Below, in pieces: positions 3,048 to 8,845 of a DNA stretch of 64,000 nt. The notes under the pieces were generated by a model. The model saw only the letters and a program-made list of their open reading frames with translations. It was not told where the DNA came from and ran no database searches. The position numbers and the translations under genes were made by a program. The stretch is taken from the sequence record MZ444140.1; one strand, 5' to 3'. Numbering within the stretch: position 1 is the first letter of the stretch; each line of letters opens with the position of its first letter.

Positions 3048-3486
3048 TACTACCGATTAATTGATTTAATGCATTACCCATGTCTGCTTGGATACGGTTA
3101 TAATCTGGGCCATTAACAACGGCAGAGACAATATTGATATCATCGACAGTTAGATAATCATTAGCGGTATCAGATGTCAGTACAGCTTTGACAAGACATG
3201 GATCAGTAATACCGTTGATAAGACTTTGGCGAATGCGAAGAATATTGTTAAAATATGTTACGGCTAGTTTAGTATCAACTGCAATATTCTCATTAACTTT
3301 ACTTAAGATTTTCTTAAATTTAGCAACAGCTTTATCCTGTTGTTCATTGAAATCAAGTAAAATCTCAAATGGAATCTGTAATGCCACCGCATTAGCTAGG
3401 AGCATTGCGCGGGTTTTACGATCAGAACCACCTAAGTTAGGCAGTTGCTTTAGAATACGGGAAAGTTCAAAACCTAATTGTTGCAT
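3037..3486 (-). CDS. Virion structural protein (gp85-like)
   Basis: 149 aa ORF, overlapping-coupled to the gp86-like gene; synteny. Confidence 0.6.
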   Translation of the reverse strand: MQQLGFELSRILKQLPNLGGSDRKTRAMLLANAVALQIPFEILLDFNEQQDKAVAKFKKILSKVNENIAVDTKLAVTYFNNILRIRQSLINGITDPCLVKAVLTSDTANDYLTVDDINIVSAVVNGPDYNRIQADMGNALNQLIGSIDE

Positions 3487-6359: not shown

Positions 6360-6390
6360 ATAAACCCTCCCGTAATGGGAGGGTTTTATG
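6360..6390. terminator. Bidirectional palindrome, CATA/TATG family
   Basis: ataaaccctcccgtaatgggagggttttatg between convergent genes. Confidence 0.75.
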
Positions 6391-6458: not shown

Positions 6459-6827
6459 TTAATATCCTTCATTAAGTAGTTCTGCTAGAGCACGTGCCTG
6501 TGAAATATCAGTAGAAGCAAAAACATCAGAAAGATAGTTATCATGTTCTTTTGCATTCTGACGCAATTCATCCATTAGATGTTTATTAGATACCGCCCAT
6601 ACTTTCCACAGATTTTTATAATCATCATATTTGGGATTATACCCGTCTAGTGGTGGTTTTCCTTTACCAGCTTTCCAATGGTTGGAGTATATGCGATATC
6701 CTTTACAATCTAACTGCCAAGCTTCCTCAATTGTTCTGCCATCAGGAAGCCTTGCGTAAAGAGCCGAGAATCTTTTGTCACCAACAGATGAACATTCATA
6801 TCCTCCTCGGCGCTTCCACTGATATAT
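6459..6827 (-). CDS. NADAR-like protein (putative ADP-ribosyl glycohydrolase), missed by the ORF track; no ATG/GTG/TTG start
   Basis: 122 sense codons (IYQWKRRGGYECSSVGDKRFSALYARLPDGRTIEEAWQLDCKGY...SQARALAELLNEGY); first codon ATA overlaps the polymerase stop (TAATA). Motif order FSALY / TIEEAWQ..K / WKAGKG / LSDVFAS resembles NADAR domains. ORF is well supported; function is inferred. Confidence 0.6.
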   Translation of the reverse strand: MYQWKRRGGYECSSVGDKRFSALYARLPDGRTIEEAWQLDCKGYRIYSNHWKAGKGKPPLDGYNPKYDDYKNLWKVWAVSNKHLMDELRQNAKEHDNYLSDVFASTDISQARALAELLNEGY

Positions 6828-8743
6828 TACTTTGGGTTCTTATAGGTATTAATAAACTTCTCTAGCAGGGTGTCCATTTTAGGAGCACCCATGATCTTCT
6901 GTGTGATTTCAATAGCATTAACCCTACCACCTGTTAAGTTTACGCCAACTTCACGGCGATGGTGTTCACTAATTCCTTCCATCATTGAGAATTCCATCAC
7001 ACATGTTTCACGTGCAATATTTAGAATCTGACTAACGTTAGGATATGTCGACACGATGTCAAGGTCGGCGATATGACAGAAGATTAAGGTTTTATAATTC
7101 GGTAAATCTTTAACACACTGCAATCCATTTGGACCTGCCATGTATGATGGTAGTGTAACAATCCAATCATTATGGCCAATAACATATTGATCAAGTTCAT
7201 GCACCATCTGATCTGAACTTGAACCAATGACACATGGCTCTGGTCTATTCAAATACCAGAAGTGCATATCGTCACATAGTCGTTTTGGGTTAGAACTAAA
7301 GTTCTTATAGTCAGATGCCTTAGAGAATAGACTTATAGAGCGACCAAGGTCATTTACTTGTTCATCAAGTTGTTCTAGTCGAATGGAGTCGATGATGTTA
7401 TAAAGACCATATTTGATTTTATGCTTAGTCTGCATCTCACGGTGCCAATCGATACCACCAAGATGTGCAGTTTCTTTAAAGGTTAACTTACCAAATTCCA
7501 TTACATATCTAATAGAATCACCATAGGTAAAGTTATCATTTAATATAAAATCATCCACCGGTACCCATTCATTACTACCTACATTTTTAATATATTTAGT
7601 AATAATGCCGCCTGGTCGGTCAACTAGTTGTTTATTAAAACCTTCAATAAAATCTTCTAAGTCCTTATCATTTTTAATGGTCGTGGATTTATCGATGTTT
7701 AGTTCTTTTCTAAGAATAGACTCTAACCGATAGTTAGGATCACGTCCTTTAGCTAATCGAGTTACTCGATAAGTTGACATAGAATCGATACATTGAAAAC
7801 TAGAGGGTGCTGTAATCCAATGCCATTGATCCTCCGGTCCTTTAGATTTAGTGACCCCAGATGCAGTGGTGGTCATAGGTTCATCAATCTTAAAATGGAA
7901 ATACCTATAATTCTTAGGTACCGATGGATCAGAAAAAACATCAGCTGGATTAACACCATAGTGTTCTAATGTTTTTAAGATTCTACCAATGTCGAAGCTA
8001 ATATTCCAGAATGCGAAGAAATCTGGTTTCCAGGTATGTAGTCGTTTAAAACATTCAATAATAATATCTACTGGTGTTTCAACAACCATTACTTCAATAT
8101 CTAGACCACGTTCTTTAATTAGATGTGATAATACCTCTTCTTTTTGTGCTTGTTCTAATGTCTCTTTCACTGGATCTTCAATATCACTAACCCATCGTTT
8201 TAAATAGGCTAAGAAAGCTTTGTTCTTATGTGTAACTGACATACAGATAATCTGACCATCGTTCTCAGCTTCATAAACGTTGGTTTCGATGTCACCGCCA
8301 GCAACAGTGTTTAGAGAGATTAGACCAGGATAACGTTCTTGATAATCATGCTTCAGATAACAGGTTGAACTAACATCACTGCCATATAGGTAAGGACTAC
8401 GCGCTAGTTGACGAAGAGATCTAGCCGAATAGTCACCTAGGATTTTACTAATCTTACGTTTCATGTCAATTTGAGTTGACATGTATTTAACTAAGTTACG
8501 CTCATATTCGTAATCTTTCTTTTCTTTATGGTTACGCATTCCTTTTGAGGTAATCCAAAAAGGACGCTGGTAGTTTTCCCACATCCTTAAATTATTTGCA
8601 GTTGTACCATCTTCAAAATGAATTCGTTCTTTAACGAAATGCGCATCTGTAAACTTACCAAATTGATCAGTACAATAAGTAATATGTTTGGCTTCAATGC
8701 CCTTAATCTTTTTCTTATTTGTAACCTGTTGTTCATTAGACAT
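6827..8743 (-). CDS. Family B DNA polymerase, exonuclease plus palm motif A subunit (gp82-like)
   Basis: ExoI GGDIETN, ExoII FWNISFDI, ExoIII YNIIDS, motif A DLDIVSTYPN. Confidence 0.85.
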   Translation of the reverse strand: MSNEQQVTNKKKIKGIEAKHITYCTDQFGKFTDAHFVKERIHFEDGTTANNLRMWENYQRPFWITSKGMRNHKEKKDYEYERNLVKYMSTQIDMKRKISKILGDYSARSLRQLARSPYLYGSDVSSTCYLKHDYQERYPGLISLNTVAGGDIETNVYEAENDGQIICMSVTHKNKAFLAYLKRWVSDIEDPVKETLEQAQKEEVLSHLIKERGLDIEVMVVETPVDIIIECFKRLHTWKPDFFAFWNISFDIGRILKTLEHYGVNPADVFSDPSVPKNYRYFHFKIDEPMTTTASGVTKSKGPEDQWHWITAPSSFQCIDSMSTYRVTRLAKGRDPNYRLESILRKELNIDKSTTIKNDKDLEDFIEGFNKQLVDRPGGIITKYIKNVGSNEWVPVDDFILNDNFTYGDSIRYVMEFGKLTFKETAHLGGIDWHREMQTKHKIKYGLYNIIDSIRLEQLDEQVNDLGRSISLFSKASDYKNFSSNPKRLCDDMHFWYLNRPEPCVIGSSSDQMVHELDQYVIGHNDWIVTLPSYMAGPNGLQCVKDLPNYKTLIFCHIADLDIVSTYPNVSQILNIARETCVMEFSMMEGISEHHRREVGVNLTGGRVNAIEITQKIMGAPKMDTLLEKFINTYKNPK

Positions 8744-8809: not shown

Positions 8810-8845
8810 TCAGCATAAAGCCTCCCCTAGGGGAGGCAATATGTT
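8810..8845. repeat. 36-bp palindromic terminator element, exact copy at 56332..56367
   Basis: tcagcataaagcctcccctaggggaggcaatatgtt at both loci. Confidence 0.9.

What the first reader, a model, noticed from the sequence alone, without database searches (positions are those of the whole stretch)
6459..6836. Hidden NADAR-like ORF fused or coupled to the DNA polymerase exonuclease subunit
A 122-codon stop-free minus-strand frame (6827 to 6459), absent from the ORF track, has no ATG/GTG/TTG before its conserved-looking core. Its motif order (YECSS..DKRFSALY / TIEEAWQ..CK / WKAGKG / LSDVFAS..SQARALAELL) parallels NADAR ADP-ribosyl glycohydrolases such as T4 gp30.3, which reverse DarT1 guanine ADP-ribosylation of DNA; this comparison is from memory. 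The junction reads AAC CCA AAG TAA TA. C CCA AAG is an X XXY YYZ slippery heptamer ending in the shift-prone Lys AAG codon directly before the stop, and a -1 shift gives CCC AAA GTA ATA, exactly this frame. That would yield a polymerase-NADAR fusion of about 760 aa, a replisome-tethered DNA de-ADP-ribosylase. Alternatives are re-initiation at ATA in a TAATA overlap (analogous to TAATG) or loss of the start codon in this isolate.
Basis: partly seen in the sequence, partly recalled or inferred. Interest (0 to 1): 0.82.

Follow-up and report, generated by a model that had tools for sequence, protein, structure and literature searches.

The report
Frameshift-fused polymerase extension in phiKZ
A conserved 121-residue enzyme-like domain with no start codon sits just after the DNA polymerase gene of phiKZ-type jumbo phages, and comparison with relatives indicates it is made by a programmed -1 ribosomal frameshift that attaches it to a fraction of the polymerase molecules.

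Summary
On the minus strand, a stop-free frame (6839..6459) follows the polymerase gene (8743..6827). It has no ATG/GTG/TTG before codon 85 and encodes a full-length member of PHROG 9995, a family of unknown function.

The window is a phiKZ-type phage, and 47 isolates share this start-less junction.

Evidence for a -1 frameshift comes from 19 related loci in which this domain ("X") lies in the -1 frame:
- All 19 carry C_CCA_AAG, G_GGA_AAG or A_AAA_AAG in the polymerase frame, exactly where a shift can join the two frames. A published review names these three heptamers as highly shift-prone in E. coli.
- 14 of the 19 have no start codon.
- X is under strong purifying selection among start-less lineages (dN/dS 0.04-0.25).
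- One distant relative encodes a genuine in-frame polymerase-X fusion.
- Two lineages place X in frame behind a TAG stop.

I conclude that a -1 frameshift at 6836..6830 yields a 761-aa polymerase-X protein (confidence about 0.75).

The NADAR assignment holds only at fold level. Sequence and profile tests fail, but NADAR proteins are X's best structural matches outside its own family. X's fusion partners (DUF4326, SLOG, RNase H) fit ADP-ribose or nucleic-acid chemistry. The function is untested.

The parts
6827..8743 (-). N-terminal part of a split family-B DNA polymerase (phiKZ gp82). It carries the exonuclease motifs and polymerase motif A. 638 aa, stop TAA at 6829..6827.
   Evidence: ORF. 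PHROG 3011 'DNA polymerase', E 1e-241. Profile positions 539-569 align to RB69 polymerase residues 404-434. The phiKZ record annotates it as DNA polymerase.
6830..6836 (-). Slippery heptamer C_CCA_AAG in the polymerase frame, formed by the last two sense codons and followed directly by the stop. This is the proposed -1 frameshift site.
   Evidence: Sequence. It is conserved in 10 related loci although the preceding codon differs (AAC, CCC, TCC, CTC, GTC, GCC), and it is G_GGA_AAG in one locus. [quoted passage not shown]
6825..6830 (-). Two linker codons read only after the shift (GTA ATA = Val-Ile). The ATA occupies the position of the ATG or GTG found in some relatives.
   Evidence: At this position PhiPA3 has ATG, 201phi2-1 has GTG, and other relatives have ACA, ACT, GTA or GTT.
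6462..6824 (-). Domain X, 121 codons. It is a PHROG 9995 family member and a compact alpha+beta enzyme-like domain with a distantly NADAR-like fold. Its stop is at 6461..6459.
   Evidence: PHROG 9995, E 2.4e-55. 206 homologues and 29 invariant columns. AlphaFold2 mean pLDDT 96.8. Fold searches.
6459..6575 (-). The 38-aa ORF that gene callers report here (PHIKZ082.1 in the phiKZ record). It is only the C-terminal fragment of X starting at an internal Met.
   Evidence: PHROG 33573 (38 positions) matches residues 84-121 of X.
6362..6386 (-). Intrinsic-terminator-like hairpin that closes the polymerase-X transcription unit.
   Evidence: 10-bp stem with 6 G-C pairs, followed by a T-rich tail.
8820..8837 (.). 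Terminator-like palindromic hairpin upstream of the polymerase gene. No terminator-like site on the coding strand was found between the polymerase and X.
6754..6819 (-). Possible RNA stem starting 10 nt after the heptamer. Support is weak and it is not conserved.
   Evidence: strand folding gives -22.5 kcal/mol, z -2.3. Only 74% of cells are paired across 9 relatives and several pairs are broken in most sequences. RNAalifold covariation term is about 0.

Best explanation
The polymerase gene and the ORF behind it are one recoded gene.

1. Most ribosomes translating the polymerase mRNA stop at TAA (6829..6827) and release the 638-aa polymerase part.
2. A fraction slip back one base on C_CCA_AAG (6836..6830). 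The Pro and Lys tRNAs re-pair on CCC and AAA.
3. These ribosomes read GTA ATA and continue through 121 further codons to the stop at 6461..6459. The product is a 761-aa polymerase-X protein with junction ...YKNPK-VI-YQWKRRGGYE....

The sequence elements, their conservation and the selection on X are shown here. The slip itself, its efficiency and its stimulators are inferred. The stop codon directly after the heptamer is the likeliest stimulator.

X is a small enzyme-like domain whose fold is most like NADAR N-glycosidases. The most likely role is a hydrolase held at the replication fork that removes ADP-ribose-type adducts or related nucleotide derivatives. This functional part is inference from fold and domain context. 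The confidence given refers to the frameshift fusion. For a NADAR-like hydrolase I would say about 0.5, and for DNA de-ADP-ribosylation specifically about 0.3.
For: 1. X has no canonical start. The frame is closed one codon upstream of the heptamer, so the only place where polymerase-frame ribosomes can enter it is 6839..6827, and the heptamer sits there.

2. Every related locus with X in the -1 frame has one such heptamer inside the equivalent window: C_CCA_AAG in 10, G_GGA_AAG in 1 and A_AAA_AAG in 8, 19 of 19 in total. No C_CCA_AAG, G_GGA_AAG or A_AAA_AAG occurs elsewhere in frame in any of the 28 polymerase ORFs, about 16,000 codons; the only other in-frame N_NNA_AAG is T_TTA_AAG. These are the three heptamers a review names as highly shift-prone in E. 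coli.

3. Given the residues Pro-Lys, the three free positions match C, CCA and AAG with probability 0.02-0.08 per lineage from each genome's own codon usage. Synonymous sites are saturated or nearly so between the major lineages (pS 0.65-0.98), yet the heptamer is invariant.

4. 14 of the 19 loci have no ATG/GTG/TTG anywhere in the open X frame upstream of the conserved core.

5. dN/dS between start-less lineages is 0.048 (L107/L112), 0.17 (L102/L103) and 0.25 (L100/L101). For phiKZ against PhiPA3 it is 0.02. X is therefore translated.

6. P0227 is a natural in-frame polymerase-X protein on a contig that also carries a phiKZ-type capsid gene. There is no homopolymer at its junction and the other frames are closed. 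Two lineages have X in frame directly after TAG with no start.

7. Polymerase homologues without X end differently and lack the heptamer.

8. In small phages, several standalone X genes begin with an ATG at the family's N-terminus, and L014/L015 have a clear AAGGAGG ribosome-binding site.

9. On function: X has 29 invariant columns, many of them polar or charged, and a confident model. Ten of its 39 non-family BFVD matches are NADAR-fold proteins that a YbiA model also finds. The order of secondary-structure elements matches YbiA apart from two missing helices. Fusion partners are DUF4326 (18 of 83), SLOG domains, RNase H, an AlkB-type oxygenase and the polymerase.
Against: - There is no direct evidence of translation of this frame or of a 761-aa product. 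I found no ribosome profiling or proteomics bearing on it.
- No conserved stimulatory RNA structure or upstream Shine-Dalgarno-like element was found.
- Five relatives do have ATG or GTG at or next to the X N-terminus. Free X made by coupled initiation therefore exists, or existed, in some lineages. phiKZ's ATA is one transition from ATG and is a near-cognate codon.
- Diversity within the phiKZ clade is too low to prove selection on X since the start was lost.
- A nested group of 7 loci has X in the +1/-2 frame behind an invariant GAAAAGAAG. Five of its six distinct variants have a near-cognate codon (GTG, TTG, CTG or ACG) at the X N-terminus, so that group may use initiation rather than frameshifting.
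- Against NADAR: no Pfam PF08719 hit, hhalign probability 0.3%, and Foldseek probabilities of 0.41 or less.
Confidence: 0.75

Rival explanations
1. X is a separate protein. It is started at the non-canonical ATA (6827..6825) by ribosomes that have just terminated at the overlapping TAA (a TAATA version of the common TAATG coupling). No fusion is made.
For: ATA lies exactly where PhiPA3 and L105 have ATG in a TAATG overlap, and where the family's initiator Met aligns. PS119XW has GTG one codon upstream, and 201phi2-1 and Viktualia have GTG. AUA is a near-cognate codon.
Against: Sister lineages with equally conserved X have ACA, ACT, GTA or GTT at this codon and no other start. All eight A_AAA_AAG loci lack any start, and there X begins upstream of the polymerase stop. 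This model does not explain why the heptamer is conserved at synonymous sites, why it is swapped for other slippery heptamers, or why an in-frame fusion exists.
Confidence: 0.12
2. In the phiKZ clade X is a recently disabled gene (ATG to ATA) that is no longer translated. The intact frame reflects too little time for decay.
For: The start-less state differs by one transition from the PhiPA3 state. The 47 isolates are 98-100% identical here, so selection within the clade cannot be measured.
Against: phiKZ is a deep branch. Its X differs from PhiPA3's with dN 0.06 while dS is saturated, and it has no stop or indel in 121 codons. Several other independent lineages are start-less and show dN/dS of 0.05-0.25. 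The heptamer and its adjacent stop are intact.
Confidence: 0.06
3. The frames are joined at the RNA level. Polymerase slippage, editing or splicing produces a minority mRNA in which X is in frame.
For: The basal lineages have a run of six A in A_AAA_AAG. Group I introns occur in this polymerase gene in PhiPA3 and L066.
Against: Efficient transcriptional slippage is described for runs of about nine A or T (PMC5009743). C_CCA_AAG has only three A. The codon register of the heptamer is conserved, which matters for tRNA re-pairing but not for RNA polymerase. No Rfam intron or other element was found at the window junction.
Confidence: 0.04

Closest known systems
E. coli dnaX (tau/gamma) -1 programmed frameshift at A_AAA_AAG
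   Same: A replication gene yields two products in a set ratio from a tandem-slippage heptamer ending in A_AAG. The basal relatives of this locus use the very same heptamer. Related taxa reach the same two-product outcome by different means (PMC5009743).
   Different: In dnaX the shift makes the shorter product, whereas here it makes the longer one and adds a whole domain. dnaX has a defined upstream Shine-Dalgarno-like element and a downstream hairpin (from my own knowledge). Neither was found here.
E. coli copA -1 frameshift at C_CCA_AAG, and the phage tail-chaperone G/GT frameshift
   Same: copA uses the same heptamer as this window; the Atkins review confirms only that copA undergoes efficient -1 frameshifting, and the heptamer is from my own knowledge. 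G/GT is a frameshift conserved across phages that makes a C-terminally extended minor product. Its slippery sequence and even its shift direction vary between lineages (from my own knowledge). G_GGA_AAG is used for g-t in some archaeal viruses.
   Different: The genes and functions are different. The copA shift truncates the protein. No polymerase-linked case in jumbo phages turned up in my literature searches.
NADAR ADP-ribosyl glycohydrolases (E. coli YbiA, DarG1, T4 AdfN/gp30.3)
   Same: Both are small alpha+beta domains. The order of elements is the same: beta, short helix, two strands, catalytic helix, two long helices, strand, C-terminal helix. An invariant Glu-x3-Gln...Lys lies on the equivalent helix (X E33, Q37, K41; YbiA E48, Q52, K55; AdfN E36, K43). 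An acidic residue follows the late strand. NADARs are X's best non-family fold matches. Both are fused to DUF4326 and SLOG domains in viruses (PMC9503650).
   Different: X is about 40 residues shorter and lacks two helices. The Lys is at +8 rather than +7. There is no Pfam hit and no profile-profile signal. AdfN is a free early protein, whereas X here is attached to the polymerase. No activity is known for X.
Chimallivirus AdfM (phiKZ gp104), a nuclear macrodomain that removes DarT2 ADP-ribose from DNA
   Same: It shows that phiKZ-type phages need DNA de-ADP-ribosylation inside the phage nucleus even though the shell is present (PMC13309987). X would be a second activity of this kind, positioned on the replisome.
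   Different: AdfM has a macrodomain fold, is a free protein with its own start, and has been tested experimentally. X is unrelated in sequence and untested.

Membership tests
Programmed -1 ribosomal frameshift site (bacterial tandem-slippage type) | X_XXY_YYZ heptamer in the upstream (zero) frame | tested here: met
   C_CCA_AAG at 6836..6830, in register with the polymerase codons. It is listed as highly shift-prone in E. coli.
Programmed -1 ribosomal frameshift site (bacterial tandem-slippage type) | The -1 frame is open from the heptamer into a long conserved coding region that has no start of its own | tested here: met
   The frame is open from 6839 to 6459, and the first canonical start is at codon 85. 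14 of 19 related loci have no start.
Programmed -1 ribosomal frameshift site (bacterial tandem-slippage type) | The heptamer is conserved beyond what the encoded amino acids require | tested here: met
   19 of 19 loci carry C_CCA_AAG, G_GGA_AAG or A_AAA_AAG in the permissive window. The base before CCA is C in six different codons. The chance per lineage is 0.02-0.08 while synonymous sites are saturated or nearly so between the major lineages.
Programmed -1 ribosomal frameshift site (bacterial tandem-slippage type) | A stimulatory element: downstream hairpin or pseudoknot at 5-9 nt, or an upstream Shine-Dalgarno-like sequence | tested here: inconclusive
   There is no conserved structure. The phiKZ-specific fold has z -2.3. 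No consistent upstream purine-rich element is present. A stop codon directly follows the heptamer in 10 of 11 loci of this type, which may substitute for such an element.
Programmed -1 ribosomal frameshift site (bacterial tandem-slippage type) | A trans-frame protein product is detected | not testable with these tools
   This needs mass spectrometry, a western blot or a reporter. No published data were found.
NADAR superfamily (Pfam PF08719, YbiA-like fold) | Match to the family's sequence model | tested here: not met
   No PF08719 hit for X or for any of the 38 aligned members, even at E up to 10. No NCBIfam hit.
NADAR superfamily (Pfam PF08719, YbiA-like fold) | Profile-profile similarity to bona fide NADARs | tested here: not met
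   hhalign of the X alignment against 24 YbiA-type NADARs gives probability 0.3%. Both profiles are narrow (Neff about 2.3), so sensitivity was low.
NADAR superfamily (Pfam PF08719, YbiA-like fold) | YbiA-like fold | tested here: inconclusive
   The best TM in the PDB is YbiA 2b3w (TMq 0.53, E 3.6). In BFVD, 10 of 39 non-family hits are NADAR-fold proteins with TMq 0.29-0.57, all at E above 0.6. The order of secondary-structure elements is the same, minus two helices.
NADAR superfamily (Pfam PF08719, YbiA-like fold) | Catalytic Glu and Lys on the central helix, plus a late acidic residue | tested here: inconclusive
   X has invariant E33, Q37, K41 and D100. NADARs have E-x3-Q-x2-K (YbiA E48, Q52, K55; AdfN E36, K43; E. 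coli C7 NADAR E88, K95, D171). The spacing differs by one residue, and the correspondence was made by eye.
NADAR superfamily (Pfam PF08719, YbiA-like fold) | ADP-ribosyl N-glycosidase activity | not testable with these tools
   This requires a biochemical assay.
Translationally coupled overlapping genes (TAATG / GTGA type) | A canonical start codon of the downstream gene overlaps the upstream stop | tested here: not met
   The window has TAATA. The feature is met in PhiPA3 and L105 (TAATG) and in PS119XW (GTGA).

The most novel reading that the evidence does not exclude
Nucleus-forming jumbo phages dose their replisome with a sub-stoichiometric repair or counter-defence enzyme by recoding. Under this reading:
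- A fixed fraction of polymerase molecules carries a minimal NADAR-like glycohydrolase that removes ADP-ribose-type base adducts from template DNA at the fork, inside the phage nucleus.
- The need for this fusion is old enough that the joining device has been exchanged several times at the same junction: A_AAA_AAG, C_CCA_AAG, G_GGA_AAG, a +1/-2 site, TAG read-through and direct fusion.
- X would also define a new, widespread enzyme family (838 clusters at 50% identity) found in the giant injected proteins of many other phages.
Probability: 0.3. Interest if true: 0.9.

Novelty: new variant of a known kind. Interest (0 to 1): 0.8.

Why it matters
- phiKZ is the model nucleus-forming phage, yet its reference annotation shows only a 38-aa fragment here (PHIKZ082.1). 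If the reading is right, the phage's replicative polymerase exists in two forms, one carrying an uncharacterised conserved enzyme domain.
- It would be a polymerase-linked programmed frameshift in jumbo phages. My literature searches found no earlier report of one.
- It would be a clear natural example of one gene junction switching between different recoding devices.
- It would give a functional handle on a large family of unknown function that recurs in phage polyvalent virion proteins and next to DUF4326 and SLOG domains.
- It is directly testable with standard laboratory strains.
- Practically, gene callers mis-annotate this locus in the public phiKZ-type records examined here, so the annotation should be corrected.

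Tried and rejected
1. My first idea was a one-base indel just after the strong GGAGGA-N-ATG at about 6799, which lies in another frame and opens a 29-aa ORF. I rejected it. The family N-terminus aligns to 6824, the residues YQWKRRGG upstream of that ATG are conserved, and the ATG is absent in relatives.

2. Sequence-based naming of X led nowhere. Pfam, NCBIfam and PADLOC gave nothing. PDB sequence search gave only spurious weak ribosomal uL3 hits.

3. hhalign against YbiA-type NADARs was negative.

4. The reciprocal fold search with a YbiA model showed only the top 50 of 119 hits, and no X-family entry was among them.

5. The search for a conserved frameshift-stimulating RNA structure failed. 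RNAalifold gave -8 kcal/mol with no covariation. A stem seen in phiKZ alone is not kept in relatives. Rfam shows nothing at the junction.

6. Literature searches for a phiKZ polymerase frameshift, for PHIKZ082.1 and for phiKZ ribosome profiling found nothing relevant.

7. I considered whether the in-frame fusion in L087 is an assembly indel. I rejected this because there is no homopolymer at the junction and the other frames are closed.

8. I considered TAG reassignment in L066. It is unlikely, because another sizeable ORF in the locus also ends in TAG, but the question is not settled on 6 kb.
Full report
**What is there**

The window is a phiKZ-type Pseudomonas jumbo phage, 100% identical to PA7, SL2 and others over this region.

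On the minus strand the 638-aa ORF 8743..6827 is phiKZ gp82. It matches PHROG 3011 'DNA polymerase' (E 1e-241). It carries exonuclease motifs, and a stretch aligns to motif A of RB69 polymerase. It is therefore the N-terminal part of a split family-B polymerase.

The ORF ends AAC CCA AAG TAA. The -1 frame reads GAA CCC AAA GTA ATA TAT CAG TGG... It stays open from 6839 to the TAA at 6461..6459.

The first ATG/GTG/TTG in that frame is at 6575. Gene callers therefore report only a 38-aa ORF, and the phiKZ reference annotates exactly that fragment as PHIKZ082.1.

The 121 residues from 6824 to 6462, called X here, match PHROG 9995 from profile position 2 to 123 of 124 (E 2.4e-55). Only the initiator Met of the family is missing.

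The polymerase and X lie in one unit bounded by terminator-like hairpins at 8837..8820 and 6386..6362, with no terminator-like site on their strand between them.

Of 47 phiKZ-type records, 42 are identical over the 61 nt around the junction and 5 differ by one base. In phiKZ, the only one of the five read, that base lies in a polymerase codon outside the heptamer.

**The family**

X belongs to a large family without annotation. There are 206 close homologues and 838 clusters at 50% identity.

Standalone members are 120-130 aa and begin with Met one to six residues before the conserved F/Y-x-W-x-R. In small phages several begin with an ATG at that point, and L014/L015 also show a clear ribosome-binding site.

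The alignment has 29 invariant columns, many of them polar or charged. They include R5, E10, S12, D16, R18, S20, D28, R30, E33, Q37, D39, K41, K54, K56, D100 and Q109. This pattern is typical of an enzyme.

**The junction in relatives**

I collected polymerase-X junctions from GenBank phages and IMG/VR contigs and analysed the frames by script.

*X in the -1 frame (19 loci).* All 19 have a tandem-slippage heptamer in the polymerase frame, inside the short window where both frames are open.

| Heptamer | Loci |
|---|---|
| C_CCA_AAG | 10 |
| G_GGA_AAG | 1 |
| A_AAA_AAG | 8 |

- No C_CCA_AAG, G_GGA_AAG or A_AAA_AAG occurs in frame anywhere else in the 28 polymerase ORFs, about 16,000 codons; the only other in-frame N_NNA_AAG is T_TTA_AAG, at one N-terminal site in six relatives.
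[quoted passage not shown] These are exactly the three heptamers seen here.
- The base before CCA is C in six different codons: AAC, CCC, TCC, CTC, GTC and GCC.
- From each genome's own codon usage, the chance of C + CCA + AAG given Pro-Lys is 0.02-0.08 per lineage. Synonymous sites are saturated or nearly so between the major lineages (pS 0.65-0.98).
- 14 of the 19 loci have no ATG/GTG/TTG anywhere in the open X frame upstream of the core.
- At the codon where phiKZ has ATA, relatives have ATG (PhiPA3, L105), GTG (201phi2-1, Viktualia), ACA, ACT, GTA or GTT. It behaves as a linker residue, not as a conserved start.
- In the A_AAA_AAG group the heptamer lies 6-18 codons before the X core, and the polymerase frame runs on past it. 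A terminating ribosome would therefore have to re-start upstream without a start codon.

*Other arrangements.*
- Polymerase homologues that lack X end differently, with no Pro-Lys and no heptamer, and are followed by hairpins.
- Two lineages (L114, L066) have X in frame directly after a TAG stop (TAG CTG / TAG CTA) with no start.
- One distant relative, on a contig that also carries a phiKZ-type capsid gene, encodes a plain in-frame polymerase-X protein (P0227, 698 aa). Its junction has no homopolymer and the other frames are closed, so it is not an assembly artefact.

*Phylogeny.* A polymerase tree puts the A_AAA_AAG loci on several basal branches. [quoted passage not shown] Loci with a start are scattered among start-less ones; for example, L105 with ATG is sister to L106 with ACA.

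**Selection**

dN/dS values by the Nei-Gojobori method:

| Pair | Start codon | dN/dS |
|---|---|---|
| L107 / L112 | both none | 0.048 |
| L102 / L103 | both none | 0.17 |
| L100 / L101 | both none | 0.25 |
| phiKZ / PhiPA3 | none / ATG | 0.02 (dS saturated) |

X is therefore translated in lineages where the only route into its frame is from the polymerase frame.

**Mechanism proposed**

A fraction of ribosomes slip -1 on C_CCA_AAG (6836..6830). They read GTA ATA and then X, giving a 761-aa product with junction ...YKNPK-VI-YQWK.... The remaining ribosomes terminate at TAA.

The sequence elements, their conservation and the selection on X are shown. The slip, its efficiency and its stimulators are inferred.

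I found no conserved downstream structure. The RNAalifold covariation term is about 0. A stem seen in phiKZ (z -2.3) is not maintained in relatives. There is no consistent upstream Shine-Dalgarno-like element.

A stop codon directly follows the heptamer in 10 of 11 loci of this type. From established knowledge of 'shifty stops', this may raise slippage.

Where ATG or GTG is present, free X may be made as well.

**An unresolved subgroup**

Seven loci nested within the C_CCA_AAG clade have X in the +1/-2 frame behind an invariant GAA AAG AAG. The polymerase frame continues 6-7 codons into X.

A -2 re-pairing of the Lys tRNA from AAG to AAA would fit. However, the codon at the X N-terminus is GTG, GTG, TTG, CTG, ACG or CGG. 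Five of these six are near-cognate starts, so ordinary or near-cognate initiation may have replaced frameshifting in this group. I cannot decide between these with the tools.

**What X is**

*Sequence methods* give nothing. Pfam, NCBIfam, PADLOC and the PDB were all negative. Profile-profile comparison with 24 YbiA-type NADARs is negative, with probability 0.3%. Both profiles are narrow, so sensitivity was low.

*Fold.* The AlphaFold2 model is very confident, with mean pLDDT 96.8.
- Against the PDB nothing is significant, but the highest TM-score by far is E. coli YbiA, a NADAR (TMq 0.53).
- Against viral models, after four true family members, 10 of the 39 remaining hits are NADAR-fold proteins (TMq 0.29-0.57). 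A YbiA model finds the same proteins at E below 1e-4.
- By my own estimate of that library's size, fewer than 0.01 NADAR hits would be expected by chance among 39.
- The order of secondary-structure elements is the same as in YbiA, apart from two helices missing in X.
- Invariant E33-x3-Q37-x3-K41 lies on the helix equivalent to the NADAR catalytic E-x3-Q-x2-K. That motif is E48, Q52, K55 in YbiA, E36 and K43 in T4 AdfN, and E88 and K95 in E. coli C7 NADAR. This residue mapping was made by eye and is a lead, not a test.

*Domain context.* Among 83 multi-domain family members, the partners are:
- DUF4326 in 18;
- SLOG-type domains in 9 (YAcAr 5, cpYpsA 2, DprA-like 2);
- RNase H in 2, in proteins of about 600 aa that also match a phage ribonuclease family;
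- an AlkB-type 2OG oxygenase in 1.

Many giant virion 'polyvalent' proteins also carry X internally. DUF4326 and SLOG are the same partners reported for viral NADAR and macro domains (PMC9503650).

*Conclusion on X.* Together this supports an enzyme acting on ADP-ribose-type or nucleotide-derived substrates. The polymerase, RNase H and AlkB-type fusions point towards nucleic-acid substrates. I rate a NADAR-like hydrolase at about 0.5 and DNA de-ADP-ribosylation at about 0.3.

phiKZ-type phages already have a nuclear macrodomain enzyme against DarT2 (AdfM, gp104). A second de-modifying activity on the replisome is therefore biologically plausible.

**Comparison with known systems and novelty**

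The mechanism is of a known kind. It resembles dnaX, copA and the phage tail-chaperone G/GT frameshift. NADAR counter-defence enzymes are also known.

What I did not find described is:
- a recoded polymerase gene in jumbo phages;
- this domain family;
- the exchange of recoding devices at one junction.

I rate it a new variant of a known kind, with high interest because it concerns a model phage and can be tested directly.

**Limits**

- All evidence for the frameshift is comparative.
- The phiKZ clade itself is too uniform to show selection since its start codon was lost.
- The function of X is inferred from a weak but specific fold resemblance and from its fusion partners.

Noticed in passing
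L097:3294-3599 (PhiPA3) and L066:2229-2604: The polymerase gene of PhiPA3 is interrupted by a group I intron (Rfam RF00028, 71.7 bits), just after the motif-A region and between residues equivalent to 562 and 563 of the window protein. An unrelated metagenomic relative has one at the same site (48.8 bits, just under the gathering score). The PhiPA3 record ends its polymerase CDS at the intron, so the last exon is unannotated.
   Followed up: partly
window 6459-6575 (-): PHIKZ082.1 and PHROG 33573 (38 positions) appear to be annotation artefacts: the C-terminal 38 residues of X called from an internal ATG. Other records leave the region empty, split it into two or three small ORFs, or label it 'major capsid protein'.
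   Followed up: partly
L089-L094, L111 (about position 3390-3410 in each): An invariant 9-mer, GAAAAGAAG, lies at the polymerase/X junction of a nested clade in which X is in the +1/-2 frame. Its flanks vary freely. Whether it marks a -2 or +1 shift site or serves another purpose is unresolved.
   Followed up: partly
L114:3307-3309 and L066:2992-2994: Two separate lineages have X in frame immediately after a TAG stop followed by CTG or CTA, with no start codon. This suggests stop-codon read-through or suppression. Another ORF in L066 also ends in TAG, so wholesale TAG reassignment seems unlikely.
   Followed up: partly
window 6770-6801 (-): A strong GGAGGA followed by ATG lies inside X in another frame and opens a 29-aa ORF. 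The GGAGGA encodes the conserved Gly-Gly of X, and the ATG is absent in PhiPA3 and others. It is probably a by-product of coding.
   Followed up: yes
P0189, P0203 (proteins): Proteins of about 600 aa fuse X at the N-terminus to an RNase H domain and a phage 'ribonuclease' family. This is a second link between X and replication or nucleic-acid processing enzymes. One family member is fused to an AlkB-type 2OG-Fe(II) oxygenase and one to guanylate kinase.
   Followed up: partly
L089, L091, L092, L094 (about 1591-1603), L110:1870, L113:1801: An in-frame T_TTA_AAG heptamer recurs near the N-terminus of the polymerase ORF in several relatives. The window phage has T_TTA_AAA at a different site instead. 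There is no obvious -1 ORF behind it, so it may be chance.
   Followed up: no
X versus polymerase, phiKZ against PhiPA3: X is much better conserved than the polymerase it follows: 88% against about 60% amino-acid identity between phiKZ and PhiPA3, although X's synonymous sites are saturated. X is among the most constrained parts of this locus.
   Followed up: partly
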